Shown here piece by piece: positions 21,175 through 62,980 of a DNA stretch of 64,000 nt. A program made the translations under genes and the position numbers. The stretch is from Mobula birostris (taxonomy: Eukaryota), in NCBI RefSeq assembly GCF_030028105.1, contig NC_092382.1:101076699-101140698 (forward strand), read 5' to 3'. The notes beneath the pieces were generated by a model. That model ran no database searches and was not told the origin of the DNA. It saw only the letters and a program-made list of their open reading frames with translations. Within the stretch, counting starts at the first letter, position 1, and the number at the start of each line of letters is the position of its first letter.

Positions 21175-22091
21175 TCACTGAGGATTAATGCTGTCCTGAC
21201 AAGGCCGAGTGAACTTTGCCATGAGACAAAACGGCGATTTCACCGTCTCCTTCAGCTGCAGCCTGAACCTGGCCTGGATCACGACGTAAAGGGCCGTGTT
21301 GGTGCAGCAGCTCAGAATTTGCAGCATGCATCCCAGCTCCCGCAGAGAATTCGGGGGTATCACGTATGAGTAATAAATCAAGCTATCCCATACGGAATAC
21401 ACCGTTAGCAGCACCCACAGCAGGATGAAATTCCCCGACATCACCAGCAGTAACTGGAGGGATTGCCTGCGGTTCTTCATCTCCGGGTCGGCGGGAGTCT
21501 CGCCATCGCCCGAACCACGGAGTCTCCTCCGGACTCGGCTGGCCAGTAAGACATGTCTGATTGTTAAACTGCTGAGCAGGAGAATCAAGACAAAGGGGAA
21601 TATTGGTGTGAGGAAATAATGAATCAGTTCAAATGTTGCCTCCTGAGATAGGGAAAAGAAACCACGTCCACTCAGACAGAGCAAGGAAGTAAATGACATC
21701 GAATATGTCCCGTCGAGCATAAAGTACCAGAATATGTTCATTACGCAGGTCAGCACAGTCACTGTCCAGAGAACCAGAGCCGCCGCTCTCCCGGTGCCGT
21801 ATTTTCGTTTCAGCTTCTGAAGACAAATGGTGACAAACCGATCAAAGGTGAAAGTGACGGTGAACCAGACAGAACAGTCCGTGGCGGCGTAGAACACGAC
21901 GGTGTGGATATTACACACGGGAACGCGATGCGACCAAAAGAAAACCTTCATTGGCATCGTGATCTTGCTCAATACCAGATCGAAGAGAACGACGAGCTGA
22001 TCCGCTGCTACCATGGCAACCAGGTACCTTGTGATGCCTTCGGAGAGACCGCACTTTCCCCGAGACAGGATGACTATTGTCATTAGGTTAA
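21175..22091 (-). CDS. GPR139-like class A GPCR copy 1, exon 2 (TM1 end to stop); spliced protein 365 aa
   Basis: Acceptor ...ccgcacag|TT at 22092-22093. The open frame runs VNLMTIVILSRGKCGLS...FTFDRFV...DPEMKNRRQS...LSCCTNTALY...SINPQ*, with a 7TM hydrophobic pattern and the TM3/ECL2 cysteines. Confidence 0.93.
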
Positions 22092-22279
22092 CTGTGCGGA
22101 GGGCAATAAAGACCAGTAACACACATTTGGATGGAAACATCCTCTGAAAACAATATTTTAATCGACAGCACTTCCGAGAGCATAGATGGATTGGAATCAA
22201 ATGGATTGGATTGAATTGGGAGACATTAACAAATCGGTGGTGATTATAATATGGCTACTGTAGTTCAGGATAATGAGGA

Positions 22280-24150
22280 GAATTTCACTGAAACCTAGCG
22301 AACATTGAAAGGCCGAGATATCGTGGACATCGAGAGCGTAGTTTCTGTAGTGGGGGAGTCTGCACTTGAAGACGAGGTTTCACAATAGAAGGGCTCACCT
22401 TGGAACAGAGCCGGGGAAACATTCTTTACCCAGAGGCTGTTGAATGTGTGGAATTCATCGCCAGAGACAGATATGGTGGCCAATTCACTGGAATCATGTG
22501 CAGAGGACAGTGATGGGCTCTTGATTCAACGGGGCGCCGATGACTACGGGACTGGGCGCCAGAGTGTGGTTGAGAGGGATAATAAATCAGCTATGATAGA
22601 ATGGGGGAGAAGGCTCGGTGCTCGAATGACCGAATTTAGCTCCCAAGCCTCATGGACTAAGCAGTGATAACAACGCATGGCTGGAATGCACTCTGAACTT
22701 TGGAAACTGAAGAAGGAGGTACAGACGGGAGGTGTTAAGAGAATAACGAACTGATTAATGTACCAGTGATCACGGTGACAGAAATTCAACACCCCCCATC
22801 TGTAAACACGGGAGAAGATGAGAATATAAGAACATTAGTAATAGGAGCAGGAATAGACCATCTGTTCAGACTGGCATGCTCCGGCAATGAAAATGAACAT
22901 CACTGATCTAACCATGCATTCATCGCCTCGTACCTAACTATTCCTCACAGCCCTTAATTCATCTAATGCAAAAGCTATGGCAGCCAGTCTTAAATATCTT
23001 TATTGATGTAGCCTCCACTACTTCCTTGAGCAGAGAATTCCACACATTCACCAGTCTCTGAGAGGAGAAGTTCCTGCTCATCCCGGTACTAAATTTACTC
23101 CCCAGAATCCTCAGGCTATGTCCCGTAGCTCTAGACGCACCTACCAGTGGAAACAACTTTCCTGACGCTATATTATCTATCCCTTCCAGGACTTTATATG
23201 TTTCTAGAAGATTTCCTCTCATTCTTCTGAGCTCCAGCGTGCACGATCCCAGTCGACTCAATTTCCCCTCATTCTCGGACCACCTCATCTCTGGAATCAA
23301 CTGGTGAACCGCCTGCATAGCCAGTTTATCCGTCGTCAAGTCAGGAGTCGAGAGGCGCACAGTACTCCAAATGTCGCCTCACCAGTACCTTGCGCATTTG
23401 CAGCATAACCTCCCTGTTCTTAAACTCAATCCCTCTGGCAACAAAGACTAATTTGCCTTCTTCATAGCCTGCTGCACCGGCAAACTACCATTTTGTGATT
23501 CAAGCACAAGCGCTCCAAAGTCCCTTCGCACAGCAACATGCTGCTATCGTTTACCACTGAAATAACATGCTGTGCTGAAAATTGCCCGTCCCAAGTAGAT
23601 GACCTCGCATTTACCAACCTTGCACTCCATCTGCCAGACGCTGGTACATTCGATGAACATATTAATATCCCTCTGCATGATGTCAGCTTCCTCTGCACTC
23701 TTTGTGTCGGCGATAAATAAACGCAGTGATAATTCCCACGTGACCTTATGCTATTTAACAGGTGAGACGTTGGAGCGACTTAATTATTTGTTTAATTCCG
23801 TTAATACTATATTCTACCATTGTATTTGACCTACGGAAAAGAACGACCTCACACTTATATGTGTTGAACTCCATCTGCCTCTTTTTAACGCAGTTTTGCA
23901 TCCTATCAATGCCCCTCTGTAAGGTCGCACAGCCCTCAACATTATCCACAACACCCACGACTTTAGGTCATCAGCATATTTACTAACCCATCGTTCCACC
24001 TCCTTACCCAGGTCATTTGTAAAAATAAGGAAGAGTACCTGTGCCAGAACAGATCGCTGAGGCACAACACTGGTCAACGCAGAACACGACAGTCTGCAAC
24101 AACACTCTTCATTCTGTGGGTAAGTCAGTTCTGGACCCACATAGCAATGT
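22280..24150. mobile_element. Old CR1 fragments in both orientations inside the GPCR intron, shared by all three GPCR introns
   Basis: CR1 3' motifs (LELRRMRGNLLETYKVLEGID; VPQRSVL...LIFTNDL) recur at ~40300-42560 and ~60030-62540. Confidence 0.8.
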
Positions 24151-24351
24151 CCCATTGGATCACATGCTTCCTTACTTTCGCAATAAGATTGGCATGGTGT
24201 ACTTTATCAAATACCCTCAGCCGATGTTTGCTGAAGCGATCCAGGTTGGAAAGACCTGTCTTGCAATTAGCTAGCCGTTCGAGTACAGGTATGAAAGAGA
24301 AGCTGATTTATATCTTTCAACGTAGTCATGAGAAAGAGACGAGACACTTAC

Positions 24352-24532
24352 CAAGAAGTGCTACAATTGCAAGTACAGGGTAGTAAACCGCTTGGAATGT
24401 CAGAAGCGCAAGATAGATTCGAGAGTCCAATGCCAGCCATTCGTAATTTTCAACAAGATATGGATATGGCCAGAAAATCTTCTTCGCGATTCCCGTAGCA
24501 CTGGGCATAGCATTTCGCAGATTACAATCCAT
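24352..24532 (-). CDS. GPR139-like GPCR copy 1, exon 1 (N-terminus and most of TM1)
   Basis: MDCNLRNAMP...YYPVLAIVALL (60 codons plus G), then a GTAAGT donor at 24351. The phase-1 join gives GTT (Val) with exon 2. Intron 2260 bp. Confidence 0.9.
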
Positions 24533-24744
24533 TGTTGCGATCGTCTAGATTCCTGTTCGCGACCCAGCCTCTGTCTTCTCTCTGTCTGCAGCCGCTGGTC
24601 TCTGATAACGCGGACTGGCGGCTCTCACTGGCACTGACGTTGTCAGGGTGACATACTAATAGACCAGGCAACCAGAAACTACTCCTCCGCGCTGACGTCG
24701 ACAATCCCCACGGACACACCCTTCATTAAATTCTACGGAATGAG

Positions 24745-24784
24745 AGGTGCAATTAACCCTTTATTTGCAGACCGTCAGAGAAGC
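24745..24784 (-). promoter_or_regulatory. Conserved 40-bp upstream block of the GPCR genes (also 43201-43240 and 63197-63236)
   Basis: aggtgcaattaaccctttatttgcagaccgtcagagaagc. Copies 2 and 3 each differ from copy 1 by one base. The block lies ~200-260 bp upstream of each ATG. Confidence 0.6.
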
Positions 24785-24939
24785 AATACAAACGGAAGAG
24801 TATCTAATAATCCCAGAAGTCGGATGTCCACGGACGCGTGCCGGGTCTTAAATGGACACAACATTGAGAAACTCATTGAAACACAACTGGATACTGATAT
24901 ACAACCAGTCTGGAAAGGAAGTTGCACGCTGCAAATAAT

Positions 24940-24981
24940 AAAACAAACAAACAAAAAACAAACAAACAAACAAACAAACAA
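24940..24981. repeat. Imperfect (AAAC)n tract
   Basis: Directly visible. Confidence 0.9.
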
Positions 24982-25048
24982 CATTAATGACATGCACAGA
25001 TTAAAAATAAATATTGCATGGATAATTATTAAAAATTATAGTTGCATC

Positions 25049-26395
25049 CAGTGGCATCCAAAGGTTTGTTAAAAATTCCTGTTACTATGAATAGCTATGC
25101 GAGTAAAAGAGGACCTGATTTCTGAAAGGCATAAAGTTAATGATGACACATTTCTTTAATATTTTAAGCAAGATTACTTTACAATGTCCATCTTTTACAG
25201 TTTCAAAATAACAAAAAAGGAAAAGGGCCCGACACAAATGCTTGGCCACCCTGTAGAGTGAGTACTTAGTAACACCCCCTGGCAAGCATCACAGCTTGTA
25301 AATGCTTTCTTCAGCCAGCTAAGAATCTTTCAATACTTGTTTGGGGCATTTTCGTCCATTATTGCTTGCAAAAGTCTTCTAGTTCTGTGAGATTCTTGGG
25401 CCGTCTTGCATGCACTGTTCCTTTGAGGTCTAACCACAGTTTGATCGATGATGTTTAGGTCGGGGAACGGTGAAGGCCATGGCAGAACCTTCAGCGTGCG
25501 CCTTCGATGTAGTCCATTGTGGATTTTGAGGTGTGTTTAGGATCATTCTCCTTTTGTAGAAGCCATCCTCTTTTCATCTCCAGCTTTCTTACAGACGGTG
25601 TGATGTTTGCTTCCAGAATTTGCTGGCATTTAATTGAATTCATTGTTCGCTCTACTGGTGAAAGGTTCCCCGTGTCACTGGCTACAACACAAGCCCAAAG
25701 CATGATTGACCATCCACCGTGGAGAGGTGTTCTTTTCATGAAGTTCTGCACCTTCCTTTTCTTCAAACATGCCTTTGCTCATTGCGGCTAAACAGTTCTA
25801 TTTTAACTTCATCAGTCTACAGGACTTGTTTCCAAAATGCTTCAGGCTTGTATAGATGTTCCTTTGCAAACTTCTGACACTAAAATTTGTGGTGAGGACG
25901 CAGGAAAAGTTTTGTCCTTATGGCTCTTCCATGAAGGTCATATTTGTTCAGGTGTCACTGCACAGCAGAACACTGCACGGCCACTCCAGAGTCTGTTAAA
26001 TCTTCCCGAAGGTCAAACGGGGGTTTTAATTTGCCTTTTTAGCAATCCTATGATGAGTTCTCTCGGAAAGTTTTCTTGTTCTTCTGAACCTCAACTTGAG
26101 CTCCGCAGTTCCTTGTAACTACTATTTCTAATTTACATTACGAACTGAGGAAACGGCTGACTGAAAACGCTTTGCTATCTTGTTGTATCCTTTTCCTGCT
26201 TTGTGGGCATTATTTCTTTTAATTTTCAGAGTGCTAGACAGCTGCTTAGAAGAACCCATGGGTGTTGATTTTTAGGGCAAAGTTAGCGGAGTCATGGTAC
26301 ATATAATGCTTTTAAATTTCCATCACTTTGCCTTTCCTAACGATGACTGTGACAAGCCATAGCCCGAACAAGCTAATTAAGGTCTGAGAAATTTC
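25049..26395 (-). mobile_element. Tc1 DNA transposon (IR/DR type), decayed, upstream of GPCR1
   Basis: Terminus cagtggcatccaaaggtttg. The minus-strand transposase reads HGGWSIMLWAC...CQQILEANITPSVRKL...ENDPKHTSKST. The far end is overwritten by CR1. Confidence 0.88.
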
Positions 26396-26399
26396 TGAA

Positions 26400-27330: not shown

Positions 27331-27439
27331 TATTGCTGCGTCAGAATTTAATTTCTCCCTGTCATATGTGAAGTTGAAGTCAATCATAGTGGTTTCACTG
27401 CCTCCGAAGGGTGATTTTACCATGAGCTCCTTAATCATT

Positions 27440-29624: not shown

Positions 29625-32600
29625 TGTGACAAAAGTACACATAGACTAAGATGTTAACTGTCCTGTGCTAGCACCAGTTGGATCAACAGTTGATCTGCCA
29701 CCTGTCTTCAGCGGAGAGAGAGATAAGTAAGACAATGGAGCAGCATTTGGAAATGTTAATGAATAGACGAGAGAGATTAACGGTAGGAGACACCGGTCTG
29801 AATATTGTCAAGACCGGCTGCTTTGAACCCTGAACTGTTTGAAGTCCGATGGACAGGCGATACCCCAACAGGGGGGATAAAAAGGGACAGGTTCGCTAAG
29901 GCAACAGACACCACACACGACACCACGAGGTAACGAGACCCTGGAAGCGGTGTGCCCCCACAAATCGGTGGGAGTTTTGGAGGGCTGGTTGCCGGACCAG
30001 CCATAGAGGCACAGGGTGGAAAGATACGGTCGGCGGGACCTGGTGTGTGTGTCCGCCCTTGCCTGGGTGCCGGGTTCACCGCAGAGGAACGATCGTATCT
30101 GGAACGGAGGGGTCACAGTCGGTGACCTCAGAAGACACTTCAAAGGGCTCGCCCGAAAGCTAACTGCGAGGAATATCGAAGGTCTGTTTGGAATCCGATT
30201 TGCATAGTCATTCGTTCTCTCTCTCTCTTCAACGCCACAACAGCGATTACTGCGAACTGAACTAAATTGAACTCTGTCATTTGAGATTGATCATTTTACC
30301 CCTGGACTGCGATAGAGCTTAATTGATCCTATTATCCTAGTTCTGTGTAGATGTGTGTTTATTCCTTGCTAACCTGTTGCATTTATATTCTTGCTATTAG
30401 AGTACTGTGTTGCTTATTTCTTTAATAAAACTTTCTTAGTTCCAGTAATCCAGATTCCAACTGAGTGATCCATTTCTGCTGGTTTGGCAACCCAGTTACT
30501 GGGTACGTAACATAAGTGGGGTTCCCATCGGCGATTTTGAACGCTAAATTTGGGACGGGGTAAATTGATTCGGTTATAATTCCCGAAAGAAAGAAAAGGC
30601 AAACAGCAGAAATGGAGATTGAGGAATTTCTAAAGGCGCCGACCTTGGACGCATTGGAGGATGCCAGGAAACCGGAATTGGCAGCTGTGGCCAAACGGTT
30701 GAATCTTGTTAAGGGGAAGTCAACAATGAGGAGAGAGGAGATGCACAGAGCTATCGTAGAGCATTATGTGTCTAAAGGTGTGTTTCCCCAAGGGGCGCTG
30801 GAGATGATGTCTATTGGAAAACCTGGTGAAGACGCAGTACAGGTGCAGATTGAAAAATTGAGACTAGAGTACGAGTTCCGGGTACGGCAGCTAGAGCACG
30901 AAGAGAAAGAGAAACAGTTAGAACAGCAAGAGAGAGAGAAACCCTTAGAACGGCAAGAGAGAGAGAAACAGTTAGAACGGCAGGAGAGAGAGAGAGAGGC
31001 AGTTGGAGCGAGAAGAGTGGCAGAGGGAAAGGGAATTCGAGCTGCAGAGGTTAAAGATGAGGGCAGAACAGGGGCCCATGCCGAACCAAGCTGGATGGCT
31101 CAGGGCGACCCAGGAGGTTAGGCTGGTTCCCCCATTTGACGATACCGATGTGGATCGGTACTTTCTCCATTTCGAAAAAGTTGCTGCACGTCAGGACTGG
31201 CCGAGGGATAAGTGGGCTGTTTTGCTTCAGAGTGTACTTAAAGGAAAAGCCCAACAAGCTTACTCAGCTTTGTCCGCAGAAGATGCTCAGAGGTATGAAG
31301 TGGTGAAAGAGGCCATCCTCAGGATTTATGAGTTGGTCCCGGAGGCATACCGGCAGAGGTTCCGGAATACGAGGAAGCAGTGGGACCGCACGTATTTAGA
31401 GTTTGCCCGTGAGATGCAGAAATATTGTGAGTGTTGGTGCGCCTCGAAGGGGGTAAATGGGGATTATGACAGACTGCTACAGCTGATCCTGATTGAGCAG
31501 TTTAAAGGTTGTGTCCCTGACGGTATGAGACCCTATATAGATGAGAAAGAGGCAGCCAGGTTAGCTGCAACTGCTAAGCTAGCGGATGAGTACGCGTTGA
31601 CACATAAAACTAAGTCTGTCCCGAATAAAGGCTACCAGAAGGGTAGTCAGGACGGCAGGGAGAATCCGCCAGAAAAGTCAGTAAGTAAGCCGGGGACTAG
31701 TGAGAAGGGTAAGGTAGACCGGGAGCAGTCAGGTAGGAAGTCTCCTGGGGTCGTCTGTTATAATTGTGGGAAAGCTGGACGCTTTGCGTCCAGGTGCTTT
31801 GCCCCAAAGAAGGAGACGGGAAAGGGAAAGGCGGCGCTTCCGACTGGCTGTATTGAGCTGGTAAACAAACCGCTAGGAGAGAAGTGGTCTGCCAAAGTTC
31901 AGGAATGGCGCGAGAGGTTTATCTCGGCCGGGTTGGTGCCGGTGAAGGAGAGGTTGAACCCAGTTCCAGTACGGATCTGCAGAGACACGGGAGCGTGTCA
32001 GTCATTGATATTAAAGGGTGTGTTAGACTTTAGTTCAGAGACCGAGACTGGGAAAGTCAGGGTCATAAAAGGCATTGGGAAAGGGACTGAGGCAGTACCC
32101 TTGCACCAGATACACCTAAAAAGCGATTTGGTCTCTGGACCAGTCACGATCGTTGAGGCTCGAACTACCGATGAAAGGCGTGGAGGTCTTACTGGGTAAT
32201 GACCTCGCCGGGGGAATTGTGTTCGCAGCAGTGAGATTGACCGGTCAGCCTGCCAGCATTGAGGCCCCGCCCATGGACTCACAGGTTTATCCCGTTTGCG
32301 CAGTGACTCGGCGTGTGTCCAGAAAGACGGCCGAAGTAAATTTAGCTGAGACGTTTCTACCAGCCTTGTACCAGGGGGAGATGGAAAGTGAAAAGAAGGA
32401 GCATAGTGAAACAGGAGGAAGTGAGGGAGCTGAGGCAGACTTAGCATTAGCCAGGTAGGAATTTGTACAAGCGCAGGACCGAGACGAGGAGGTGATGGTT
32501 TCGGCGGAGACAGATCTCTCTGAAGCAGCATTAAAAAGGCAGCCAGTAGGCTATTGTGTGGAGGAGGCAGTGCTAAGGAAGAAAGGGAGACCAAGTACCG

Positions 32601-34683
32601 TACCCGCAGATGAGGAATGGGGGATGGCGCCAAAAATTTATGGGGATTAGATTCTTAACCTGGTCCACAAGATACCCCTCGGTGGACATTTTGGGGGAGG
32701 AAAACAGTCGGCGGAATCATGAAAGAAGTTTACTGGCTGCACAGAAGGAAGAATGTTATTGACTATTGCAGACGTGAGTTAACACAGTTAGAAGCTATTA
32801 ACATGTTAAAAGTCCACCACGATCAGAAAACAGATCTAGCTGGAGATATCATGAAAATTAATGAGGCTAGGGTGCCACCTGATAAGGGGAGGACCCATTT
32901 TGCAAAGATAAGCGTGGTGCCGACCTGATGGGAGATGTCTATTGTTTTGACCTGTTTTGCTGATAAGTTCTCTCACCTAACCCCCGAACAAAGCGGGCCA
33001 TTGACAAAGCTAATTAAACTGCTAATTAAACAGGTCTAGACGTCCTGAGGCGATGCGAAGGCCTGGGACATGGGGCTGTTGTCACATCAGGTCAGCCTAG
33101 TGAGCAACACCTCTATAGAAAGATTAATTCAGTGACAAACGGGCTAAAGAACACAGAAGTGTATATTGGCAATGTAGTGGTCTGGAGTAACACATAGGAG
33201 GATCTGTTTAAAAAGCTGTTTGAAGCCAGCCTGACAGTAAACCTCGAAAAGAGTGAATTCGAGCACGAAAAAGTCACTTATCTGGGACTTGTGGTAGGAC
33301 AGGGGCAGCTGGTTCCGATGCAAGCTCAGTTGCGGGCTATCACTGAAGTCCCCACCCCGACAGACAAGAGAGCCCTGAGAAGGTTCTTCGAGATGGTGGG
33401 GTACTATCGGAAGTTTTGCAGGAAAAAAAAAACAACTTTGCGGATAGTACCCACCCTCATATTAAGCCCTTGCCAAAGAATGATAATTGGTATAGGACGA
33501 CCCTTGTTATCTGTGTCCGGGGCGAAAACCACTGAGAAGTTACACTGATCACAATTCATTAGTGTTTCTGGCCACTATGAAGTCTGCTAAGTTGGAGCCT
33601 GGTTTGAGAGGATTATTAAAATATCACACATAAAAGGAACAGAAAATGTGATTGCTGACTGTCTGTCAGGTGTTGACAACTTAAAATTCTCTGTATGAGA
33701 CAAATAGCTGATGAAGATGTATATTTGTGTGTATCCAATAATACATTCATGCTAGTAATTTTTACCCCGGTAAAAATTCTTAAAGGGGAGGGGTGTGACA
33801 AAGTACATATAGACTAAGATGTTAACTGTACTGTGCTATCACCAGTGGGATCATCAGTTGATCTGCCACCTGTCGTCAGGAGACAGTGATAAGTAAGCAG
33901 AAGTAATGGAGCAGCATTTGGAAATGTTAATGAAGAGACGAGATTGATTAACGGAAGGAGACACCGGTCTAAGTATTGTCAAGACCGGCTGCTTTGAACC
34001 CTGAATTGTTTGAAGTCTGATGGACAGGCGATACCCCAACAGGGGGGATAAAAAGGGACAGGTTCGCTAATGCAACAGACACCACACAGGACACCACGAA
34101 GTAACGAGACCCTGGAATCGGTATGCCCCCACAAGTCGGTGGGAGTTTTGGAAGGCTGCCGCGGGACCAGCCATAGACGCACAGGGTGGAAAGATGCGGT
34201 CGGCGGGAACCTGGTGTGTGTGTCCGCCCTTGCCTGGGTGCCGGGTTCACCGCAGAGGAACGATCGTATCTGGAACGGAGGGGTCACAGTCGGTGACCTC
34301 AGAAGACACTACAAAGGGCTCGCCTAAAGCTAACTGCGAGGAATATCGAAGGTCTGTTTGGAATCCGATTTGCATATTCATTCGTTCTCCCTCTCTCTTC
34401 AACGGCACAACAGCGATTACTGCGAACTGAAGTAAATTGAACTCTGACACTTGTGATTGATCATTTTACCCCTAGACTGCGACAGAGCTTGATTGATCCT
34501 ATTATCCTATGTTCTGTGTACATGTGTGTTTATTCATTGCTGACCTGTTGCATTTATATCCTTACGATTAGAGTACTGTGTTGCTTATTTCTTTAATAAA
34601 ACTTTCTTAGTTCCAGTAATCCAGACGCCAACTGAGTGATCCATTTCTGCTGGTTTGGCAACCCATTTACGGGGTGGGTAACA
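29625..34683 (+). mobile_element. Gmr1-like Gypsy LTR retrotransposon, internally deleted (non-autonomous)
   Basis: 5' LTR 29625-30512 and 3' LTR 33794-34683 (both TG...CA), target duplication GTAT (29621-29624, 34684-34687), polypurine tract aaaggggagggg (33782-33793), and a degenerate Pro-type PBS after 30512. Confidence 0.95.
30612..32458 (+). pseudogene. gag-protease region of the Gmr1-like element (coiled coil, SCAN-like capsid, zinc-knuckle remnant, aspartic protease), two frameshifts
   Basis: ORFs 30612-31121, 31003-32199 and 32153-32458 contain YFLHFEKVA...W...LLQSVLKGKAQQAY...YELVPEAYRQRFR...ILIEQF, CYNCGKAGRFASRC, RDTGACQSL and VLLGNDLAGG. Confidence 0.88.
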
Positions 34684-39185: not shown

Positions 39186-40099
39186 TCACCGAGGATTAAT
39201 GCAATCCTGACAACGCCGAATGGACTTTGCCATGAGGCGTAAGGGCGATTTCACCGTCTCCTTCAGCTGCACCCTAAACCTGGCCTGGACCACGGCGTAA
39301 AGGGCCGTGTTGGTGCAGCAGCTCAGGAGCTGCAGCATGTAGCCCAGCTCCCGCAGAGAACTCGGGGGAATCGAATCAAAGCTCTCCCATATGGAATCCA
39401 CCGTCAGCAGCGCCCACAGCAGGATGAAATTCCCCGACATAACCAGCAGTAAGAGGAGGGCTTGCCTGCGGTTCTTCAACTCCGGGTCGGCGGGCATTTC
39501 GCCATCCCGCGAACCACGGAGTCTCCTCCGGGCTCGGCTGGCGAGGAAGACGTGTCTGATGGTTAAACTATTGAGCAGGAGTATCAGGACAAAGGGGAAT
39601 ATTGGGGTGAGGAGGAAATGAATCAGTCGAAATGTTGCCAGCTGAGAAATGGAAAATGAACGGTTACTAATAAGGCAGAGCAAGGACATATCTAATGCGG
39701 AATATGACTCATCCAGCATAAAGTACCAGAATATGTTCTTTACGCAGCTCAGCACAGTCACTGTCCCCAGAACCAGAGCCGCCGCTCTCCCGGTGCAGTT
39801 TCTTCGTTTCAGCTCCTGAAAACAAATGGCGACAAACCGATCAAAGGTGAAAGTGACGGTGAACCAGACGGAACAGTCCGTGGCGGCGTAGAACACAACG
39901 GCGTGGATATTACACACGCGAGCACGATGTGACCAGTTGAAAAACTCCATTCGCACGTTAGTCACCGGAATTTTGCTCAATACCAGATCGAAGAGAACGA
40001 CGAGCTGATCCGCTGCTACCATGGCAACCAGGTACCTTCTGACGCCTTTGGAGAGACCGCACTTTCCCCGAGACAGGATGACGATTGTCACCACGTTCA
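39186..40099 (-). CDS. GPR139-like GPCR copy 2, exon 2; spliced protein 364 aa
   Basis: Acceptor ccgcacag|TG at 40100-40101. The open frame runs VNVVTIVILSRGKCGLSKG...FDRF...TNTALY...CINPR*. Confidence 0.93.
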
Positions 40100-41778
40100 C
40101 TGTGCGGACGGAAATATAGAAGATTAATACACTTTTGCATGGAAATAGTTCTCTGAAAGCAACTATTTTAATCGATAGCACTCCCAAGAGCAGAGATGAA
40201 CATGGAATTAATGTAACTATGAAGGAGATTATCAGGATCATTATTAAATTGGCAGTGAGTACAATGCACCTGCTGAAGTTCAGAAGGATGAGAGGAGTCT
40301 CATTGAAACTTATTGAACATTGAAAGGCCGAGATATCGTGGACGCGGAGAGGGTTGCTTCAGTCGTGGTGGAGTCTACAACCTGAAGACGAGGCTTCACA
40401 ATAAAAAGACATCCCTTTAGAACGGAGATGGGTCCTAATTTCTTCAGACCGAGACAGGTGAATGTGTGTAATTCAGCGGCACAGACGGTTCATTGGAACC
40501 ATTGGCAGAGGAGAGTGATGGGTGCTTTATTCATCAGGCTGCCGATGGCTGCGGGGCTGGGCGCCAGAATGTGGTTGAGTGCGATAATGAATCAGCTACA
40601 CGGAAAGGCGGCGAAGGCTCGGTGCTCGGCTGGTCGAATTCACCTTCTGAGCTTTATGGGCAAAGCAGCGATAGCAATCGAATCCTGAAACGTATTCTGA
40701 TCTTTAGCACCAGGAGAACGAGTTGCAAACGGGAAGTGTTAGGAGAGTAATGAACGAATTAATGTACCAAGTACCACGGTGACAGAAATTCAACTCCCCT
40801 CAGCTCTGAACACGAGAGAAAGTGAGAATCTAAGAACATTAATAATAGGAGCAGCGATAGTCCATCTGTTCGGACTGGCATGATCTGACAATGAAGAAGA
40901 TCATGGCTGATCTGACCATGGACTCATCGCCGCATACCTACCTTTTCCACATAGCCCTTAATTCGTCTACTATGCAAAATCAATGGCAGCCAGTCTTAAA
41001 TATATTTATTGAAGTTGCCTCCAGTGCTGCACTGAGCAGAGAATTCCACAATTCACCGGCCTCTGAGAGAAGAAATTCCTCCTCAACACGATCCTAAGTT
41101 CAGTCCGCAGAATCCTCAGACTATGCCCCGTAGGTCTAACCTCGCCTATCAGTTGAAACAACTTTCCGGCGACTATCTTATCTATCCATTCCATAATTTT
41201 ATATGTTTCTAGCAACTTCCTCTCATTCTTCTGAGTTCCAGCGAGTAAGATGCCAATCGAAACAATTTCCCCACATAGCCGAACCACCTCAGCTCTGCAA
41301 TCAATTGGTGATCCGCCTGCACAGCCAATTTATCCATCCTCAAGTCGGGAGACCAGAACTGCACAGTTCTCCAAATGCCTCCTCAATAGTACCTTGTCCA
41401 GCTGCAGCACATCCTCCCTACTCAATCACTCTGACAACCAAGGCTAACATCCTGTTTACTTTCTTGACAGTCTGCTGCACCTGCAAACCAAACTTTTGTG
41501 ATTTAAAGCACAAGTACTCCAAAGCGCCTCCGCACAGCAGCATACTGCAATCGTTTACCACGTAAATAATATTCTGTTCTTATAATTGTCCTTCCCATTC
41601 GATAACCTCGCATTTACCAACTTTGCACTCCATCTGCCGGACGCTGCTACATTCGCTGAACATATTAATATCCCACTGCATGTTGTCAGTTTCCTCTGCA
41701 CTCTTTGTGGCGTCGATAGATCATGGAAGTGATGATGCCCACGTACCCTTATGCTTTTTAACTGGTGAGACGTTGGAG

Positions 41779-42213
41779 TATTACATAACTGGTGGGTATC
41801 TTGTGACTGTCTTGTGACCATGATGTAGTTCAGTACCTTGTAAGATTAGGAAGGTTTGTGCAATGTTCATTCGCCAGGACAAGGTCAGTTCATTTAAACC
41901 ATTTGATTTCCTTCGCTGTGAATCTATTGGACAGAATCAGAAGTAACGTCACGTCTCGAAGACAGCCGTTTCCAGAGACAGCTCTCCTGATTGACCGTGT
42001 AAATCACTTGGGCTTTCGAAGTTACCATTTTAATACTGTGTTCGAACTTACCACTTTAAGAACTGTTCCGGGGTTTTCGCATAGCAGTTAACTTCTGGTT
42101 AAGTTAGTCATTTGAATAGTTTTCGCTATTGCTGACCAGAATGTATTACATGTTTGTTTGTTTGTTTATAAAAACTGACACAATTATATATTTGTGTTGC
42201 GGGTGACGTGACA
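41779..42213 (+). mobile_element. Solo LTR in the GPCR2 intron only, related to the 55252-55850 LTR
   Basis: Ends tattaca...gtgaca. It shares gttaacttc(t/c)ggttaag and cttgg(g/a)cttt(c/t)gaa blocks with the 55-kb LTR, and is absent at the orthologous site in introns 1 and 3. Confidence 0.65.
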
Positions 42214-42816
42214 TAAGCTATTTGTTTGTTGATTTATTTATTTTTAAATTAATTCCGCTAATACTATATTCTGCCAACATATTTAACCTACCTAAAAGAA
42301 CGACTCTCATTTACCTATGTTGAACTCCAACTGCCTCTTCTTAACGCAGTTTTGCATCCTCTCAAAGTCCAGGTGTAACCTCTGACAGCCCTCCACACTG
42401 TCCACAGCGCCCCCAATCTTCTTTCATTACCAAATGTACTAACCCATCGCTCCACTCCCTCATCCAGGTCATTTATGAAAATCAGGAAGAGTAGGAGTTC
42501 CAGAACAGATCCCTGAACCACACCACTGGTCAACGACCTCAATGCAGAATATGACAGTCTACAACAACACTTTGCCTTCTGTGGATAAGCCATTTCTGTA
42601 TCGGCATAGCAATGTCCCCTTGGATGACATGCCTCCTAAATTTCACAATAAGACTTGCATGGGGTACCTTATCAAATACACTCAGCCGATGTTTGCTGAA
42701 GCGATACCGGTTGGAAAGACCTGTCTTGCAATTAGCGAGTCGTTAGAATACAGGGATGAATGAGAAGCTAAATTCTATTTTTCAACATAATCATGAGGAA
42801 GAGACGAGACACTTAC

Positions 42817-42997
42817 CAAGAGGAGCTACAGTTGCGAGTGCAGGGTAGTAAAACTCTTGGACTCTCCGAAGGAGGAGACTGATTCGATTGTCCAAAATCA
42901 GCCATTGGTAATCATCAACAAGATGTGGATACAGCAAGAAAAGGTACTTCGCAATTTCCGTAGCATTGGGCGATGCAGTTCCAGGATTATAATCCAT
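42817..42997 (-). CDS. GPR139-like GPCR copy 2, exon 1
   Basis: MDYNPGTASPNAT...YYPALATVAPL plus G, 181 nt, GTAAGT donor. Intron 2717 bp. Confidence 0.9.
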
Positions 42998-57350: not shown

Positions 57351-58907
57351 ATCTCTGATGTTGTTATGGACTATCTAAATATTTTATTAGCCTGTCCCAT
57401 TTTTAGTGTTGTTATGATTCTCGCAAACTTCTGATCATTCAATTATGGGCTGATCCAGCACAATGGGAGACTAATCTTTCCCACTTTGTATAATGAGTGT
57501 AAACTTCCATTTTCCTCAGAGGCACATGTCTGTCTCAGCTTCCCTTCAAGGTCACTAATCTTTTACCTCTACCACCATACTAGAAGTGAATCGCATGGAC
57601 TCTCTGCTTAAAGGTCTAGCCCTTTAATGTTTATTTGAAATTGCCACCTGAAAGTTCCCCGTCACGTTATGCATGCTTCTAAATCAATGATTCTGGAGTA
57701 ATCTGCAAGATTGTTAGTCAGCACATTTTCATACATCCGATTTTTGGTTGTGTATATCTGAAACCCCGGAACAACTCACTGTCGATCAGTGTCTATGAAC
57801 TGTTCTTTATGCGTTGTGATTAACATGCAAATACTGGGTTACAACTTTGTAATTTCTGCATTAATGTCTGTCACCTGCTGGCGGCATTAAGAACAAACCT
57901 ATCATTTCACTGGCTACCTTTCCAACCCATCTGCACTTTCACCAAGCTCCGTCAACAACCACAACTCCATCACGTTTTGTGCCGTCTGCAAGCACGTTTA
58001 TGCATAATCCCTATTTTATTCCAGAACATCTCCAAATTGTCACGTGCAGAATCGCTGCGCTCCACCACTGCCTTCTGTCCTCCATGTTCAGAACATATTT
58101 GAATCCACGCTATCCTCTGCAGCTCCGTCTTACGGATCCCCCTCCTGGAAAGGGTCCTTCTGAAATGTCTTACTTCCAGTCTGTTCCCATGGCTAACAGA
58201 ATGTCTGACGTTTCCAGTGGCTTAATCAGCATATAAGTATTAACATTAGGATTGTATGAGGCAACAAGAGCCCCCCGAGTAAACCAACGCCGTAACAGAC
58301 AACGGCGGGAAAGGAGCAGATCACCGGATGGTCAAACAGGGAAGGAGAAAAGGACAGACTCCGAGGGATCGAAAAAGATGACGGTCGACGTTTCAGAGAG
58401 GTTACGTTCCAATCAGTATCTCACGTGGAATACTCCAGTGTCAGACATTATTCCTGAAATGTCAGCGGGGAAAAAAAAAACTCTGATGTATCCAAACCAA
58501 TCGAAGGTGTTTGTGCGAGAGCAATACTTCTGACAGCATTTCACATTTCGTGCCGAATCTCAATATATAAATAGACACCCGGTGCGCTTTCCTCAACAAT
58601 CACGTTCCCCACATGCCAAATGTACTCAATCCGATCCGACTGATACGATCACCACGGCACAAAGTGATTGTGATGTCCAAGTATGGCAGAATCACCCACT
58701 TGGTGGAACTCAGAGAGACATTACAGGGAACTGGTGAAGAAGGTAAACTGGAAAGAGCTCTGTGGAAAGCAGATTGTTGACACTCCTCAATCATATTAGT
58801 GCCTCAATGTGTGAAGGGCAAAAGATTACCACAGCCGTTCAGAGTCCCTATGGAACAGGACATGCCAGTGAATAAATAGTATATTTTGGGGAGGTATTCG
58901 AGAAAAG

Positions 58908-59833
58908 TCACTGAGGATTAATGCGGTCCTGACAACGCCGAATGCACTTTGCCATGAGACAGAATGGCGATTTCACCGTCTCCTTCAGCTGCACCCTGAA
59001 CCTGGCCTGGACCACGGCGTAAAGGGCCGTGTTGGAGCAGCAGCTGAGGAGCTGCAGCATGTAGCCCAGTTCCCGCAGAGAATCCGGGGGAATCGAGTAA
59101 AAATAAAGGTAATAGCTCTCCCATACGGAATACACCGTCAACAGCGCCCATAGCAGGATGAAATTCCCCGACATCACCAGCAGTAACTGGAGGGATTGCC
59201 GGCGGTTCTTCATCTCCGGGTCGACGGGCGTCTCGCCATCGCGCGAACCACGGAGTCTCCTCCGGGCTCGGCTGGCCACTAGGACGTGCCTGATGGTTAA
59301 ACTGTTCAACAGGAGAATCAGAACAAAGGGTAATATTGGGGTGAGGAGGAAATGAATCAGTAGAAATATTGCCAGCTGACGTGGGGAAAATAAACGGTTA
59401 AAAGTCAAACACAACACGGTCGTAATTTTTATCGAATAGAACCGATTGAGCATAAAGTACCAGAATATGTTCTTTACGCAGCTCAGCACAATAACTGTCC
59501 CCAGAACCAGAGCCGCCGATCTCTCGGTACAGTATTTCCGTTTCAGCTTCTGAAAACAAATGGCGACAAATCGATCAAAGGTGAAAGTGACGGTGAACCA
59601 GACAGAACAGTCCGTGACGCCGTACAACACGACGGCGTGGATATTACACACGGGAACACGAGCTGACCAGTAGAAAACCTTCATTGGCATGTAAGTCATC
59701 GGAATCTTGTTCAATATCACATCCGAGAGAACGACGAGCTGATCCGCTGCTACCATGGCAACCAGGTACCTTGTGACGCCTTTGGAGAGACCGCACTTTC
59801 CCCGAGACAGGATGACGATTGTCACCACGTTCA
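58908..59833 (-). CDS. GPR139-like GPCR copy 3, exon 2; spliced protein 368 aa
   Basis: Acceptor ccgcacag|TG at 59834-59835. The open frame runs VNVVTIVILSRGKCGLSKG...FDRF...SNTALY...RINPQ*. Confidence 0.93.
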
Positions 59834-60508
59834 CTGTGCGGAGGGAAATAAAGACCATTGACACACATTTGGATGGAAGCATTCTCTGAAAACAATTATT
59901 TTAATCTACAGCACTTCCGAGAGCAGAAATCAACATGGAATTAATGTATCTGCTGAGGAGATTATCGGGAGCAGTTATTAAATCGGTAGTGATTATAATG
60001 TACCTGCTGAAGTTCAGGAGAATGAGGGGAATCTCATTGAGACCGATCGAACATTGAATGGCTTAGATATCGTGGACGTGGATAGGGTTGCTTCTGTAGT
60101 GGGGGAGTCGACAACCTGAAGACGAGGCTTCACAATAGAAAGACATCCCTTTAAAACGGAGATGGGCAGTAACTTCTTCAGACCGAGACAGGTGAGTGTG
60201 TGGAATCCATCGCCGCAGACGGCTGTGGGAGGCAGGTCATTGGAACCATTGGTAGAGGAGAGAGATGGGCTTTTGATTCATCGGGTCGTCGATGGCTACG
60301 CGATGAGCGCCAGAATGTGGTTGAGAGCGATAATGAATCAGTTACGATGGAATGGCGGAGAAGGCTCGGTGCTCGAATGACCTAATTTAGCTCCCGAGCC
60401 TTGTGGGCAAAGCAGTCATCGCAACCGATGGCTGGAATGTATTCTGAGCTTTGGCACCATAAGAACGAGTTGCAAAGGGAAGTGTTGAGAGAATAATGAA
60501 CTAATTTA

Positions 60509-61336
60509 GGTAACCATAGAAACTACAACTCAGAAACAGGCCCTTTGACCCTTCTTGGCTGTGCCGAACCATTTTCTGCCTAGTCCCACCGACCTGCACA
60601 AGGACCATATCCCTCCATACACCTCCCATCAAAGTATCTGTCCAACTTATTCTTAAATGTTAAAAAAAAGAACCCGCATTTACCATTTCATCTGGCAGCT
60701 CATTCCATGCTCCCACTACTCTCTGTATGAAGAAGCCCCCACTAATGTTCCCTTTAAGCTTTACCCCCCTCACCCTTAACCCATGTCCTCTGTTTTTTTT
60801 CTCCCCTTGCCTCAGTGGAAAAAGCCTGCTTGCATTCACTCTATCTATACCCTTCATAATTTTATATACCTCTATCAAATCTCCCCTCATTCTTCTACGC
60901 TCCAGGGAATAAAGTCCTAACCTATTCAACCTTTCTCTGTAACTGAGTTTCTCAAGTCCCGGCAACATGCTTGTAAACCGTCTCTGCACTCTTTCAACCT
61001 TATTTATATCCTTCCTGTAATTTAGTGACCAAAACTGAACACAATACTCCAGATTCGGCCCTACCAATGCCTTTTACAACCTCATCATTCCATTCCAGCT
61101 CTTTTACTAAATACTTTGATTAATAAAGGCCAATGTACCAAAAGCTCGCTTTACGACCTTATCTACCTGTGACGCCACTTTTAGGGAATTTTGTATCTGT
61201 ATTCCCAGATCCCTCTGTTCTACTGCACTCCTCAGTGCCTTCCCATTAACCCTGTATGTTCTACCTTGGTTTGTCCTTCCAACGTGCAATACCTCACACT
61301 TGTTTGTATTAAACTCCATCTGCAATTTTTCAGCCC
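60509..61336 (-). mobile_element. Young 5'-truncated CR1 insertion specific to the GPCR3 intron
   Basis: Near-intact ORFs 60660-61067 and 61107-61361 (LEYCVQFWSLNYRKDINKVERV). The empty site is visible in intron 2 (...aattaatgtaccaagtaccacgg...). Confidence 0.9.
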
Positions 61337-62799
61337 AAGTATCACGGTGACAGAAATTCAACTCCCCTCAACTGTCCGCAGGAGAGAAAACGAGAACATT
61401 AGAAACTAGTATTAGGAGCAGAAACAGTTCATCTGTTCGATCTGGCATGATCTGACAATGAAGATGATCACGGTTGATCTAACCATGGCCTCATCGCCGC
61501 ATTCCTACTTTTTCCTCATAGCCATTAATTCCTCCACTATGAAAAAACTATGGCAGCCAGTCTTAAATATATTTATTGAGGTTGGCTGCACTGCTTCATT
61601 GAGCGGAGAATTCCACAGATTCACCCCCCTCTGAGAGAAGAAGTTCCTTCCTAATCACAGTCCTAAATTTACTCCGCAGAATCCTCAAGCTACGTCCCGT
61701 AGTTCCAGTCTCACTTACCACTGGAAACAACTTTCCTGCCACTATCTTATCTATCCATTCCATAATTTTATATGTATCTGGAATATTTGCTCTCATTCTT
61801 CTGAGTTCCAGCCAGTAGGATCCCAGTCGACTCGGTTTCCATTCATAGTCGAAACACCTCATCTCTGGAATCAACTGGTGAACCGTCAGCACAGCCAGTT
61901 TATCCATCATCAAGTCGGATGACCAGAACTGCACAGCACTCCAAATGCTCCCTCACCAGAACCTTGTGCAGTTGCAGCATAACCTCCCGGCTCGTAAACT
62001 CAATCCCTCTGGCAACAAAGTCGCACATCGTATTTGTATTCTTGATAGTCTGCTGCACCTGCAAACTAACCTTCTGTGATTCAAGCACAAACACGCCAAA
62101 GTCCCTCCGCACAGCAGCACACTGCAATCGTTTACCACCTAAATGATATTCCGTTCTTACATTTGCCTTTCCCAAGTGGATAACCTCGCAGATACCAACT
62201 TTTGGCGTTGGAGCTACTAATTTATTCATTTAATTCCGTTCATACTATTTTCTCCCATCATATTTAACCTTCCAAAATGAATGACCTCACACTTATCTGT
62301 GTTGAACTCCATCTGCCTCCTCTTAACGCTGTTTCGCATCCCATCAAAGTCCCACTTTTACCTCTGTCAGCCATGAACATTGTCCACAACATCCCTAATT
62401 TTGGTTCATGAGCAAATTCACTGACACATCGCTGCACTTCCTTCCCCAGGTCACTTATAAAAATGACGAAGAGTACGGGTTCCAGAACAAATCCCTGAGG
62501 CACACCCCTGGTCAACGCCCTCCATGCAGAATATGACCGTCTGCAACAACGCATTGCCTTCTGTGGGCAAGGCATTTCTGGATACACATAGCAATGTTGC
62601 TTTGGATCACACTCCTGATTACTTTCACCATAAGCGTTGCATGGGTTACCTTATCAAATACACTCAGCCAATGTTCGCTGAAACGCTACCGGTTGGAGCA
62701 ACCTGCCTTTCAATTGGCGAGTCGTAAGAAGACAGGTATGAAAGAGAAGCTGACTTATATTTTTCAACGTTAATCATGAGGAAGAGACGAGACACTTAC

Positions 62800-62980
62800 C
62801 AGGAAGAGATACAATGGTGAGTACAGGGTAGTAAACCAGTCTGAATGTTATAAGCGCCCAAAAGATACGTGAGTCCAACGTTAACCTTTCATAATTTTCA
62901 ACAAGATATTGATACGCCCAGAAAATATTCTGCTCAACTCCAGGAGCATTCCGCGATATATTTCGCAGATTATGATCCAT
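62800..62980 (-). CDS. GPR139-like GPCR copy 3, exon 1
   Basis: MDHNLRNISRNAPG...YYPVLTIVSLP plus G, 181 nt, GTAAGT donor. Intron 2966 bp. Confidence 0.9.

What the first reader, a model, noticed from the sequence alone, without database searches (positions are those of the whole stretch)
21175..62980. The three GPCRs are conserved inside the cell and hypervariable outside
Seen: cytoplasmic and core segments are near-invariant (TIVILSRGKCGLS, RYLVAMVAADQLVV, TDCSVWFTVTFTFDRFV, QARFRxQLKETVKSP). ECL2 differs radically around its Cys: DGTYSMSFTSLLCLSGRGFFSLSQE, DESYSALDMSLLCLISNRSFSISQL and NRFYSIKITTVLCLTFNRLFSPRQL. The only length differences are frame-preserving and extracellular: copy 1 is 3 aa shorter in ECL1 and copy 2 is 4 aa shorter in ECL3. 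N-termini diverge in sequence, but exon 1 is exactly 181 nt in all three. All frames are intact amid heavily decayed transposons. Inference: this is the signature of a ligand-diversifying receptor family (chemosensory or immune surveillance) rather than a single-ligand neuronal receptor.
Basis: partly seen in the sequence, partly recalled or inferred. Interest (0 to 1): 0.72.

Follow-up and report, generated by a model that had tools for sequence, protein, structure and literature searches.

The report
Ray GPR139-like receptor gene array
The three genes are intact members of a family of more than a thousand GPR139-like receptors in a ray genome (probably the giant manta); their signalling core is conserved and their outward-facing loops evolve about as fast as neutral DNA or faster, as in smell or taste receptor families, but no expression data show where they act.

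Summary
The window holds three intact two-exon class A GPCR genes on the minus strand (365, 364 and 368 aa). Each has a 181-nt exon 1, a GTAAGT donor and a CCGCACAG acceptor. The quoted invariant core motifs, the divergent ECL2 sequences and the -3 aa (ECL1) and -4 aa (ECL3) differences are all present.

The genes are not a private trio. They are three subtypes within an 84-copy array spanning 3 Mb of one chromosome. A family-specific TM3 motif occurs 1,119 times genome-wide, against 0 in the control. RefSeq names the relatives 'probable GPR139', but similarity to human GPR139 is weak and two of five GPR139 ligand residues are replaced.

Codon models give omega of 1.20 in loops, 0.65 in outer TM halves, 0.53 in cytoplasmic parts and 0.27 in inner TM halves. 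Loop dN between the three genes is 1.5-2.1 times intron divergence. Seventeen independent sister pairs give a loop omega of about 0.9-1.0. Site models favour a class with omega 2.4-4.8, concentrated in the loops, but recombination between paralogues is demonstrated and weakens those tests.

Diversifying selection is therefore probable, not proven. Expression could not be tested. No paper describing this family was found.

The parts
24352..24532 (-). Copy 1, exon 1 (181 nt). Encodes the extracellular N-terminus and the first half of TM1.
   Evidence: ATG at 24532, GTAAGT donor after 24352. Similar to exon 1 of copy 3 by blastn and tblastn.
22092..24351 (-). Copy 1, intron (2260 nt), containing LINE-like debris.
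   Evidence: GT..AG ends. K80 distance to the other two introns is 0.216-0.219.
21175..22091 (-). Copy 1, exon 2. Encodes the end of TM1 through the C-terminus and the stop. The full protein is 365 aa.
   Evidence: Acceptor CCGCACAG, open frame. Pfam 7tm_1, E 9.5e-17.
42817..42997 (-). Copy 2, exon 1 (181 nt).
40100..42816 (-). Copy 2, intron (2717 nt).
39186..40099 (-). Copy 2, exon 2. The full protein is 364 aa.
62800..62980 (-). Copy 3, exon 1 (181 nt).
59834..62799 (-). Copy 3, intron (2966 nt), containing high-copy LINE-like fragments.
   Evidence: Read depth reaches thousands to tens of thousands at 60.5-61.3 kb and 62.2-62.6 kb.
58908..59833 (-). Copy 3, exon 2. The full protein is 368 aa.
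59376..59450 (-). Copy 3, ECL2 (LNRFYSIKITTVLCLTFNRLFSPRQ). This is the most variable segment and surrounds the conserved Cys.
   Evidence: Translation checked. Entropy 1.10 bits. A beta-hairpin in the AF2 model of a 69%-identical homologue.
39642..39716 (-). Copy 2, ECL2 (LDESYSALDMSLLCLISNRSFSISQ).
21643..21717 (-). Copy 1, ECL2 (LDGTYSMSFTSLLCLSGRGFFSLSQ).
59658..59702 (-). Copy 3, ECL1. The equivalents are 39924-39968 in copy 2 and 21925-21960 in copy 1, where it is 3 aa shorter.
59079..59114 (-). Copy 3, ECL3. The equivalents are 39357-39380 in copy 2, where it is 4 aa shorter, and 21346-21381 in copy 1.

Best explanation
The three genes are functional members of a very large class A GPCR family of sharks and rays. 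The family is only distantly related to GPR139.

Shown:
- Each gene has two exons and an intact 7TM frame.
- The window's genes represent three subtypes, with 4, 28 and 27 copies, within an 84-gene tandem array on one chromosome.
- The genome holds more than 1,100 copies of the family's TM3 motif, in arrays on many chromosomes.
- The G-protein-facing half is under purifying selection. This half comprises ICL1, the DRF motif, the inner TM halves, NTxxY and helix 8.
- The outward-facing parts change at about the neutral rate or faster. These are the N-terminus, ECL1-3 and the tops of TM3 and TM5.
- New combinations arise by tandem duplication and by recombination or gene conversion between paralogues.

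Inferred: every copy feeds the same intracellular signalling machinery. The variable outer vestibule, especially the ECL2 hairpin around its conserved Cys, gives each subtype a different ligand specificity. The family would then work as a ligand-diversified sensor repertoire, in the way smell, taste or pheromone receptor families do.

The tissue and the ligands are unknown.
For: - Gene models and intactness. 59 of 64 array copies have an open exon 2. All 31 fully fetched genes have a 181-nt exon 1 and GT..AG introns.
- Family size: 4994 and 5308 first-look candidates, with 129 and 121 scored at E<1e-99. The DCSVWFTVxF pattern has 1,119 matches against 0 for the control.
- Array structure.
- Purifying selection: omega 0.27 in inner TM halves (2dlnL 95 against omega=1). 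Exon 2 shows no indels against 2.26 per kb in introns of the same genes.
- Omega gradient: 1.20 in loops, 0.65 in outer TM, 0.53 in cytoplasmic parts, 0.27 in inner TM. Seventeen independent sister pairs reproduce it at 0.96, 0.53, 0.41 and 0.34.
- Loop dN is 1.5-2.1 times intron divergence, bootstrap P<=0.027.
- Loop omega in the copy-2 clade is 1.79 (p about 0.04).
- M2a-like against M1a-like gives 2dlnL 81. 7 of the 10 top sites lie in loops and 2 at the tops of TM3 and TM5. In the copy-2 clade, 10 of 12 lie in loops.
- Loops are not simply unconstrained. 6 of 52 loop columns are invariant, and loop omega in the copy-3 clade is 0.47, significantly below 1.
- Mosaic genes L043 and L055 show recombination between subtypes.
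- Fold: AF2 pLDDT 84.6, 7TM with an ECL2 beta-hairpin. The nearest solved folds are peptide-type class A receptors and GPR139.
Against: - There is no expression evidence. No RNA run held the sequence, and the laid runs look like low-coverage DNA with no exon1-exon2 junction.
- Pooled loop omega does not differ from 1.
- Independent sister pairs give 0.89-0.96, with an interval of 0.45-1.29.
- No single site survives multiple-test correction in the FEL-like test.
- Recombination is present, and in the copy-3 clade the site model flags sites scattered over the whole protein, which suggests an artefact.
- Pairwise synonymous divergence is also high in loops (0.28-0.76). Part of the loop divergence could therefore be older ancestry that escaped gene conversion, and not faster change.
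- The site-model code is my own. It uses fixed branch lengths and a parameter grid.
Confidence: 0.7

Rival explanations
1. Relaxed constraint only. The genes are functional receptors, but their loops are structurally tolerant and simply drift. The inside/outside contrast would then carry no information about ligand diversification.
For: - Pooled loop omega is 1.20, not different from 1.
- Sister-pair loop omega is 0.89-0.96.
- No site survives multiple testing in the FEL-like test.
- Site-model LRTs are known to be inflated by recombination, which occurs here.
Against: - Loop dN exceeds intron divergence 1.5-2.1-fold in all three pairs. Pure drift predicts a ratio of at most 1.
- Loop omega differs between clades: 0.47, significantly below 1, in one, and 1.79 in another.
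- Several loop columns are invariant, so the others must exceed 1 for the average to reach about 1.
- The high-omega sites cluster around the ECL2 Cys and at the tops of TM3 and TM5, and do not spread evenly.
Confidence: 0.2
2. Concerted evolution artefact. Gene conversion homogenises most of each gene, introns included. The loop-coding segments escape conversion and simply keep older divergence, so the contrast reflects conversion tracts and not protein-level selection.
For: - Pairwise synonymous divergence is also raised in loop codons: 0.28-0.76 against 0.11-0.23 elsewhere and 0.19-0.22 in introns.
- ECL2 piS in the copy-2 clade is 0.14 against 0.05 overall.
- Mosaic genes exist.
Against: - Tree-based estimates show little loop-specific rise in synonymous rate: tree dS is 2.28 against 1.68-1.78, and mean posterior alpha is 1.35 against 1.1-1.4.
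- ECL1 and ECL3 in the copy-2 clade have piS of 0 but piN of 0.055-0.076.
- Escape from conversion confined to exactly the ligand-facing segments would itself imply selection to keep loop diversity.
- Loop synonymous counts rest on only about 36 sites.
Confidence: 0.15
3. Immune or other non-chemosensory surveillance receptors. The same diversified family would be expressed on leukocytes or epithelia, like formyl-peptide, chemokine or MRGPR receptors, and not in sensory neurons.
For: - The evolutionary signature (tandem arrays, fast loops) is shared by immune GPCR expansions.
- The nearest folds include chemerin and chemokine receptors.
- Catshark 'olfactory' receptor families are often expressed outside the nose (PMC11979771).
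Against: Nothing here argues specifically against it. A family of more than 1,000 genes is a size known (from general knowledge) mainly for chemosensory repertoires. No expression data exist either way.
Confidence: 0.15
4. They are orthologues of the brain receptor GPR139, as the database name suggests, duplicated a few times.
For: - RefSeq names the homologues 'probable GPR139'.
- GPR139 is the best solved match for a family profile, E 1.3e-15.
- The deep-pocket residues 3x33 (aromatic), 5x43 (His) and 6x48 (Trp) are kept.
Against: - A single sequence scores only 29.7 bits against human GPR139, the same as against the muscarinic M4 receptor.
- There are more than 1,100 copies.
- The polar ligand anchors R244 (6x51) and N271 (7x38) are replaced by Leu and by Tyr, Cys or Phe.
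- The nearest bony-vertebrate relatives (coelacanth, salamanders, bichirs) are about 30% identical and are themselves far from human GPR139, at 70 bits.
Confidence: 0.02
5. Young, functionless amplified DNA. The frames would be open only because the segmental duplications are recent.
For: - Some copies are identical, and one block recurs at an exact offset of 3,028,725 bp.
- About 8% of copies carry stops or truncations.
Against: - Subtypes differ by about 20% at neutral sites yet keep open frames.
- Exon 2 has 0 indels where about 83 are expected at the intron rate.
- Inner-TM omega is 0.21-0.27, with 2dlnL of 24-95.
- The family is kept across sharks and rays.
Confidence: 0.03

Closest known systems
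GPR139 (and its sister GPR142), class A orphan receptors activated by aromatic amino acids
   Same: GPR139 is the best solved-structure match for a family profile (7VUG, E 1.3e-15 against 2.9e-10 for the next). Shared features are an NTxxY-like TM7 motif without Pro, Trp at 3.41, the aromatic 3x33, His 5x43 and Trp 6x48 of the deep hydrophobic pocket, and the N-terminal half of TM1 ('YYP.L....P.N..T..ILS').
   Different: Identity is about 21-25%. The polar ligand anchors R6x51 and N7x38 are replaced. There are more than 1,100 copies, whereas GPR139 is described as a conserved single receptor (PMC12208981 and PMC7946892 abstracts). DRY is DRF. The loops evolve rapidly.
'Probable GPR139' genes of coelacanth, salamanders, bichirs and some teleosts (unstudied, automatically named)
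   Same: These are the nearest relatives outside the elasmobranchs: 29-33% identity over the full length, E 1e-10 to 8e-29. They too are far from true GPR139, at 70 bits.
   Different: In the 50%-identity library they appear as a few small clusters (1-5 members), against 96 clusters at E<1e-30 for this family. Their copy numbers were not measured here.
Vertebrate chemosensory class A families (odorant receptors, TAARs, V1R/ORA, T2R)
   Same: Hundreds to thousands of genes lie in tandem arrays. The main coding exon is largely intronless. There is birth-and-death turnover with pseudogenes. The signalling core is conserved and the ligand-facing residues vary. Whole-gene omega is elevated, about 0.56 here.
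   Different: There is no sequence kinship beyond class A. Variability sits mostly in the loops and N-terminus and less in TM3-TM6 pocket residues. A short 5' coding exon supplies the N-terminus and half of TM1. Expression in sensory cells has not been shown.
Lineage-specific class A expansions with fast loops outside chemosensation (formyl-peptide receptors, MRGPRs, chemokine receptors)
   Same: Tandem duplication, fast-evolving extracellular faces, and an ECL2 hairpin of the peptide-receptor type.
   Different: This family is one to two orders of magnitude larger. No immune expression is known.

Membership tests
Class A (rhodopsin-like) GPCR | Significant match to the 7tm_1 profile over seven helices | tested here: met
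   PF00001 at 60-73 bits against a cut-off of 30.5, covering profile positions 2-260. The AF2 model of a 69%-identical full-length homologue has seven TM helices plus helix 8, pLDDT 84.6.
Class A (rhodopsin-like) GPCR | Landmark residues: N1.50, D2.50, the C3.25-ECL2 Cys pair, (D/E)R(Y/F) at 3.49-3.51, P5.50, W6.48 and N7.49..Y7.53 | tested here: met
   All are present and invariant in the three genes: VN, AAD, C..C, DRF, LP, LLW and NTALY. P6.50 and P7.50 are absent; GPR139 shares the P7.50 absence.
GPR139 orthologue | High sequence identity to GPR139, which reviews describe as highly conserved across vertebrates | tested here: not met
   29.7 bits and E 4e-6 for a single sequence, equal to the M4 muscarinic receptor. 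About 21% identity in the structural alignment.
GPR139 orthologue | Ligand-site residues F3x33, H5x43, W6x48, R6x51 and N7x38 (PMC5430874) | tested here: not met
   3x33 is Tyr, 5x43 is His and 6x48 is Trp, so these are kept. 6x51 is Leu and 7x38 is Tyr, Cys or Phe (alignment; residue list).
GPR139 orthologue | Single or low copy number | tested here: not met
   84 copies in the local array and 1,119 motif matches in the genome.
Chemosensory receptor repertoire (functional class) | A large multigene family in tandem arrays with birth-and-death turnover | tested here: met
   5 of 64 copies are broken. Segmental duplicates and mosaics are present.
Chemosensory receptor repertoire (functional class) | Diversifying selection on ligand-contact positions | tested here: inconclusive
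   Loop omega ranges from 0.9 to 1.8 depending on the test. Loop dN is 1.5-2.1 times intron divergence. An M2a-like class with omega 2.4-4.8 sits mostly in the loops. Recombination confounds these tests.
Chemosensory receptor repertoire (functional class) | Expression in chemosensory cells, typically one or few receptors per cell | not testable with these tools
   No RNA run held the sequence. The laid runs gave no spliced contig.
Chemosensory receptor repertoire (functional class) | Activation by external chemical cues | not testable with these tools
   This needs heterologous expression and ligand screening.

The most novel reading that the evidence does not exclude
This GPR139-related family of more than 1,100 genes is the large chemosensory repertoire that sharks and rays appear to lack. 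The literature read here reports only 2 canonical odorant receptor genes and 32 canonical V2R genes annotated in a catshark. The family would detect peptides, amino-acid derivatives or other waterborne cues through a hypervariable N-terminus and ECL2 vestibule. New specificities would arise by exon-level shuffling between tandem paralogues.
Probability: 0.3. Interest if true: 0.88.

Novelty: new member of a known kind. Interest (0 to 1): 0.6.

Why it matters
Cartilaginous fishes are noted for a keen sense of smell, yet they have very small repertoires of the classical olfactory receptor families (PMC11979771). A class A family of over a thousand mostly intact genes, with a conserved signalling core and fast-evolving outer face, is an obvious candidate for an overlooked sensory or surveillance repertoire.

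The proteins are in RefSeq under a misleading automatic name. Nine full-text searches found no paper on them.

The array also offers a clean system for studying how duplication, recombination between paralogues and selection build receptor diversity.

A practical point: the RefSeq models of the two Mobula species that were read (P0001 from M. hypostoma, P0003 from M. birostris) start at an internal Met and lack exon 1. As annotated they are therefore six-helix truncations.

Tried and rejected
- **Ancestral-state counting.** I used partition codon models, likelihoods that sum over internal states, pairwise counts and independent sister pairs instead.
- **First AF2 model.** The model of the window's exon-2 protein with 30 sequences was poor (pLDDT 57.8). 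I used it only for helix positions. The 69-sequence model of full-length homologue P0006 replaced it.
- **Unregularised FUBAR-like mixture.** It over-fitted, with many sites at alpha=0. I discarded its posteriors.
- **Multiprocessing grid run.** It timed out and was rerun serially.
- **Expression.** The second found no RNA holder. The single read-laying run, on four runs guessed to be RNA, showed low-depth exon contigs, huge depth on intronic repeats and no exon1-exon2 joint, so it gives no verdict.
- **Supplementary tables.** Those of the catshark sensory paper are not held.
- **Protein Atlas look-up.** It added nothing beyond 'probable GPR139'.
- **Rejected readings.** A GPR139 orthologue, functionless young duplicates, and a private three-gene cluster.

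Full report
**1. What is in the window**

Three long minus-strand ORFs match the class A GPCR profile 7tm_1. Each is the second exon of a two-exon gene.

Upstream of each lies a 181-nt exon that starts with ATG and ends at a GTAAGT donor. It encodes about 38 extracellular residues, in two of the three copies with an N-x-S/T sequon, and the first half of TM1. Exon 2 starts after a conserved ...CCGCACAG acceptor, in phase 1. This reading restores the TM1 motif 'YYPxLxxVxLxVNxxTIVILS'.

The spliced proteins are 365, 364 and 368 aa. Full-length RefSeq homologues from a stingray (P0006, 368 aa) and a horn shark (P0024, 366 aa) have the same N-terminal layout. The Mobula models P0001 and P0003 start at an internal Met inside what is really the intron's 3' end, so they lack TM1.

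**2. The trio is a sample of something much larger**

The window is C17:101,076,699-101,140,698 of a 4.0-Gb assembly. The contig length, 112,019,601, equals that of the record holding Mobula birostris proteins. The genome is therefore most likely the giant manta ray.

A six-frame search with copy 3 found 84 copies between 98.147 and 101.208 Mb.
- Median spacing is 17.4 kb.
- The subtype order recurs (D-A-B and similar).
- Orientation flips near 99.10 Mb.
- The window's genes are types C (4 copies), B (28 copies) and A (27 copies).

The first look flagged 4994-5308 candidates genome-wide. The family-specific TM3 pattern encoding DCSVWFTVxF has 1,119 exact matches, against 0 for the reversed control. 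Full-length open copies form arrays on C7, C11, C34 and other contigs.

Of 64 distinct array copies examined, 59 have an open exon 2 and all keep the acceptor. All 31 genes fetched in full have a 181-nt exon 1 and GT..AG introns.

**3. Kinship**

All 120 listed database relatives are elasmobranch proteins automatically named 'probable' or 'putative GPR139'. In total, 1972 clusters reach E<=1e-5.

The name is loose.
- A single sequence scores 29.7 bits against human GPR139, no better than against the M4 muscarinic receptor.
- A family profile does put GPR139 first, at E 1.3e-15 against 2.9e-10 for the next.
- Of the five residues that define the GPR139 agonist and amino-acid site (PMC5430874), the deep hydrophobic three are kept: 3x33 aromatic, 5x43 His and 6x48 Trp.
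- The polar anchors are replaced: R6x51 by Leu and N7x38 by Tyr, Cys or Phe.

An exhaustive search of 50%-identity representatives found 96 clusters at E<1e-30. The nearest non-elasmobranch relatives are unstudied 'probable GPR139' genes of coelacanth (33%), salamanders (29%), bichirs and some teleosts. The coelacanth gene is itself only 70 bits from human GPR139.

An AF2 model of P0006 (pLDDT 84.6) shows a standard 7TM bundle, helix 8, an ECL2 beta-hairpin and two short N-terminal helices. Foldseek neighbours are peptide-type class A receptors (opioid, neurotensin, somatostatin, CCK, orexin, chemerin). GPR139 ranks tenth but has the highest identity, 21%.

**4. Is the outside really hypervariable, and why?**

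I assigned topology from class A landmarks and the two AF2 models.

*Variability.* Loop columns carry 1.00 bit of entropy, against 0.37 in outer TM halves, 0.35 in cytoplasmic parts and 0.16 in inner TM halves (permutation p<1e-4). 27 of the 35 most variable columns are in loops. The gradient holds across other elasmobranchs.

*Codon models on a fixed tree (IQ-TREE GY+F3X4, 59 sequences).* Omega is 1.20 in loops (not different from 1), 0.65 in outer TM halves, 0.53 in cytoplasmic parts and 0.27 in inner TM halves. Loop omega by clade is 1.79 in the copy-2 clade (2dlnL 4.3) and 0.47 in the copy-3 clade (2dlnL 5.7, below 1).

*Seventeen phylogenetically independent sister pairs.* This test is insensitive to recombination. 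It gives a loop pN/pS of 0.89-0.96 (interval 0.45-1.29), against 0.34-0.53 elsewhere.

*Introns as a neutral yardstick.* For the window's three genes, intron K80 distance is 0.19-0.22 over about 2.1 kb per pair. Loop dN is 0.35-0.41, or 1.6-2.2 times that value. Adding the N-terminus gives 1.5-2.1 times, with bootstrap P<=0.02.

*My own pruning-likelihood code.* It reproduces the IQ-TREE likelihood within 5 units.
- The FEL-like scan gives 25 sites with beta>alpha at p<0.1, 10 of them among the 52 loop codons. None survives multiple testing.
- The M2a-like model beats the M1a-like model by 2dlnL 81. It puts 11% of sites at omega 2.4. 7 of the 10 top sites lie in loops, and 2 lie at the tops of TM3 and TM5.
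- In the copy-2 clade, omega is 4.8 and 10 of 12 top sites lie in loops.

*Caveats.*
- Recombination is real. L043 joins a type-A exon 1 and intron to a type-B exon 2, and L055 is also mosaic.
- In the copy-3 clade the site model flags sites all over the protein, which looks like a homoplasy artefact.
- Pairwise synonymous divergence is also high in loops, although tree-based estimates show little excess.

*My reading.* The loops as a whole evolve at about the neutral rate. They combine a constrained scaffold with a minority of positions under diversifying selection. The scaffold includes the invariant Cys, WS, YS and PP. The fast positions lie around the ECL2 Cys, in ECL1 and ECL3, and at the tops of TM3 and TM5. 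This reading is probable, not proven.

**5. The genes are functional**

Subtypes differ by about 20% at neutral sites yet keep their frames. Within the copy-2 clade, introns carry 2.26 small indels per kb. Exon 2 carries none, where about 83 would be expected. Inner-TM omega is 0.21-0.27, with strong likelihood support.

**6. Mechanism**

*Shown:* a common, conserved intracellular and core half; a variable outer half; and diversity generated by tandem duplication, segmental duplication and recombination between paralogues. That recombination can re-pair N-termini encoded by exon 1 with loop sets encoded by exon 2.

*Inferred:* all copies couple to the same transducer, and the subtypes differ in ligand specificity. 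The ligand probably carries a hydrophobic or aromatic group, because the deep pocket is kept. It is not anchored as a free amino acid is in GPR139, because the polar anchors are lost. The ECL2 hairpin resembles that of peptide receptors.

*Unknown:* the tissue and the ligands.

**7. Expression**

No public RNA run held the sequence.

**8. Literature and earlier notes**

Nine full-text searches found no paper on a GPR139-like expansion in cartilaginous fishes. The catshark sensory-genomics paper stresses small classical olfactory repertoires and does not mention this family.

Two other first-stage notes on this genome describe the same kind of array elsewhere. They are unchecked and do not count as independent evidence.

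**9. Verdict**

This is an undescribed but RefSeq-annotated mega-family that behaves like a chemosensory repertoire. It is best filed as a new member of a known kind of system.

Noticed in passing
window 29625-34683: Two direct repeats of about 890 nt, 92.6% identical (29625-30512 and 33794-34683), flank a 398-aa ORF at 31003-32199. The ORF has a SCAN (retroviral capsid-like) domain and a CCHC zinc knuckle. This looks like a gag-only LTR retroelement inserted between copies 1 and 2.
   Followed up: partly
G000:C17, 33.7-68.1 Mb and 5.7-30.1 Mb: A dozen or more family copies with identical scores and the same single in-frame TGA lie megabases apart on the same chromosome (391-aa frame at 356.4 bits; 311-aa frame at 352-355 bits). 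This suggests that one pseudogene is carried inside a dispersed large repeat or mobile element. It is unexplained.
   Followed up: no
G000:C17:98,147,231-98,180,624 versus 101,175,956-101,209,349: Three consecutive genes recur with identical scores at an exact offset of 3,028,725 bp. Identical exon-2 pairs are L004/L005, L011/L012, L034/L035 and L058/L059. These are either very recent segmental duplications or assembly duplication.
   Followed up: partly
G000:C17, about 99.09-99.11 Mb: The array switches from minus-strand to plus-strand genes here. Two blocks of about 0.9 Mb are therefore arranged head to head, like a giant inverted duplication.
   Followed up: no
P0001, P0003 (RefSeq models of Mobula hypostoma and M. 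birostris): The annotated proteins start at an internal Met (MVFI..LRTVN) encoded in the intron's 3' end. They omit the 181-nt exon 1, so they lack the N-terminus and half of TM1. Homologues P0006 and P0024 have the full form.
   Followed up: yes
L043 (G000:C17:99,949,990-99,954,898) and L055: These are mosaic genes. L043 has a type-A exon 1 and intron (86-96% identical to copy 3) joined to a type-B exon 2 (94-98% identical to copy 2), with the switch at the intron/exon-2 border. L055 switches subtype in mid-intron.
   Followed up: yes
ECL1 and ECL2 of the array copies (for example window 39924-39968 and 39642-39716): N-glycosylation sequons come and go between paralogues. 8 of 63 copies have a sequon in ECL1 (NWS); 23 of 63 have one or two in ECL2 (NRS, NSS). 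Loop variation may therefore also change the glycan shield.
   Followed up: partly
window 2230-7039: A tandem duplication of about 2.4 kb (2230-4642 against 4640-7039, about 80% identical) lies upstream of the genes. Its content was not examined.
   Followed up: no
P0201 and its cluster (Hypanus sabinus): A subfamily 36% identical to copy 3 is automatically named 'vasopressin V2 receptor-like'. Name-based counts will therefore underestimate the family.
   Followed up: no
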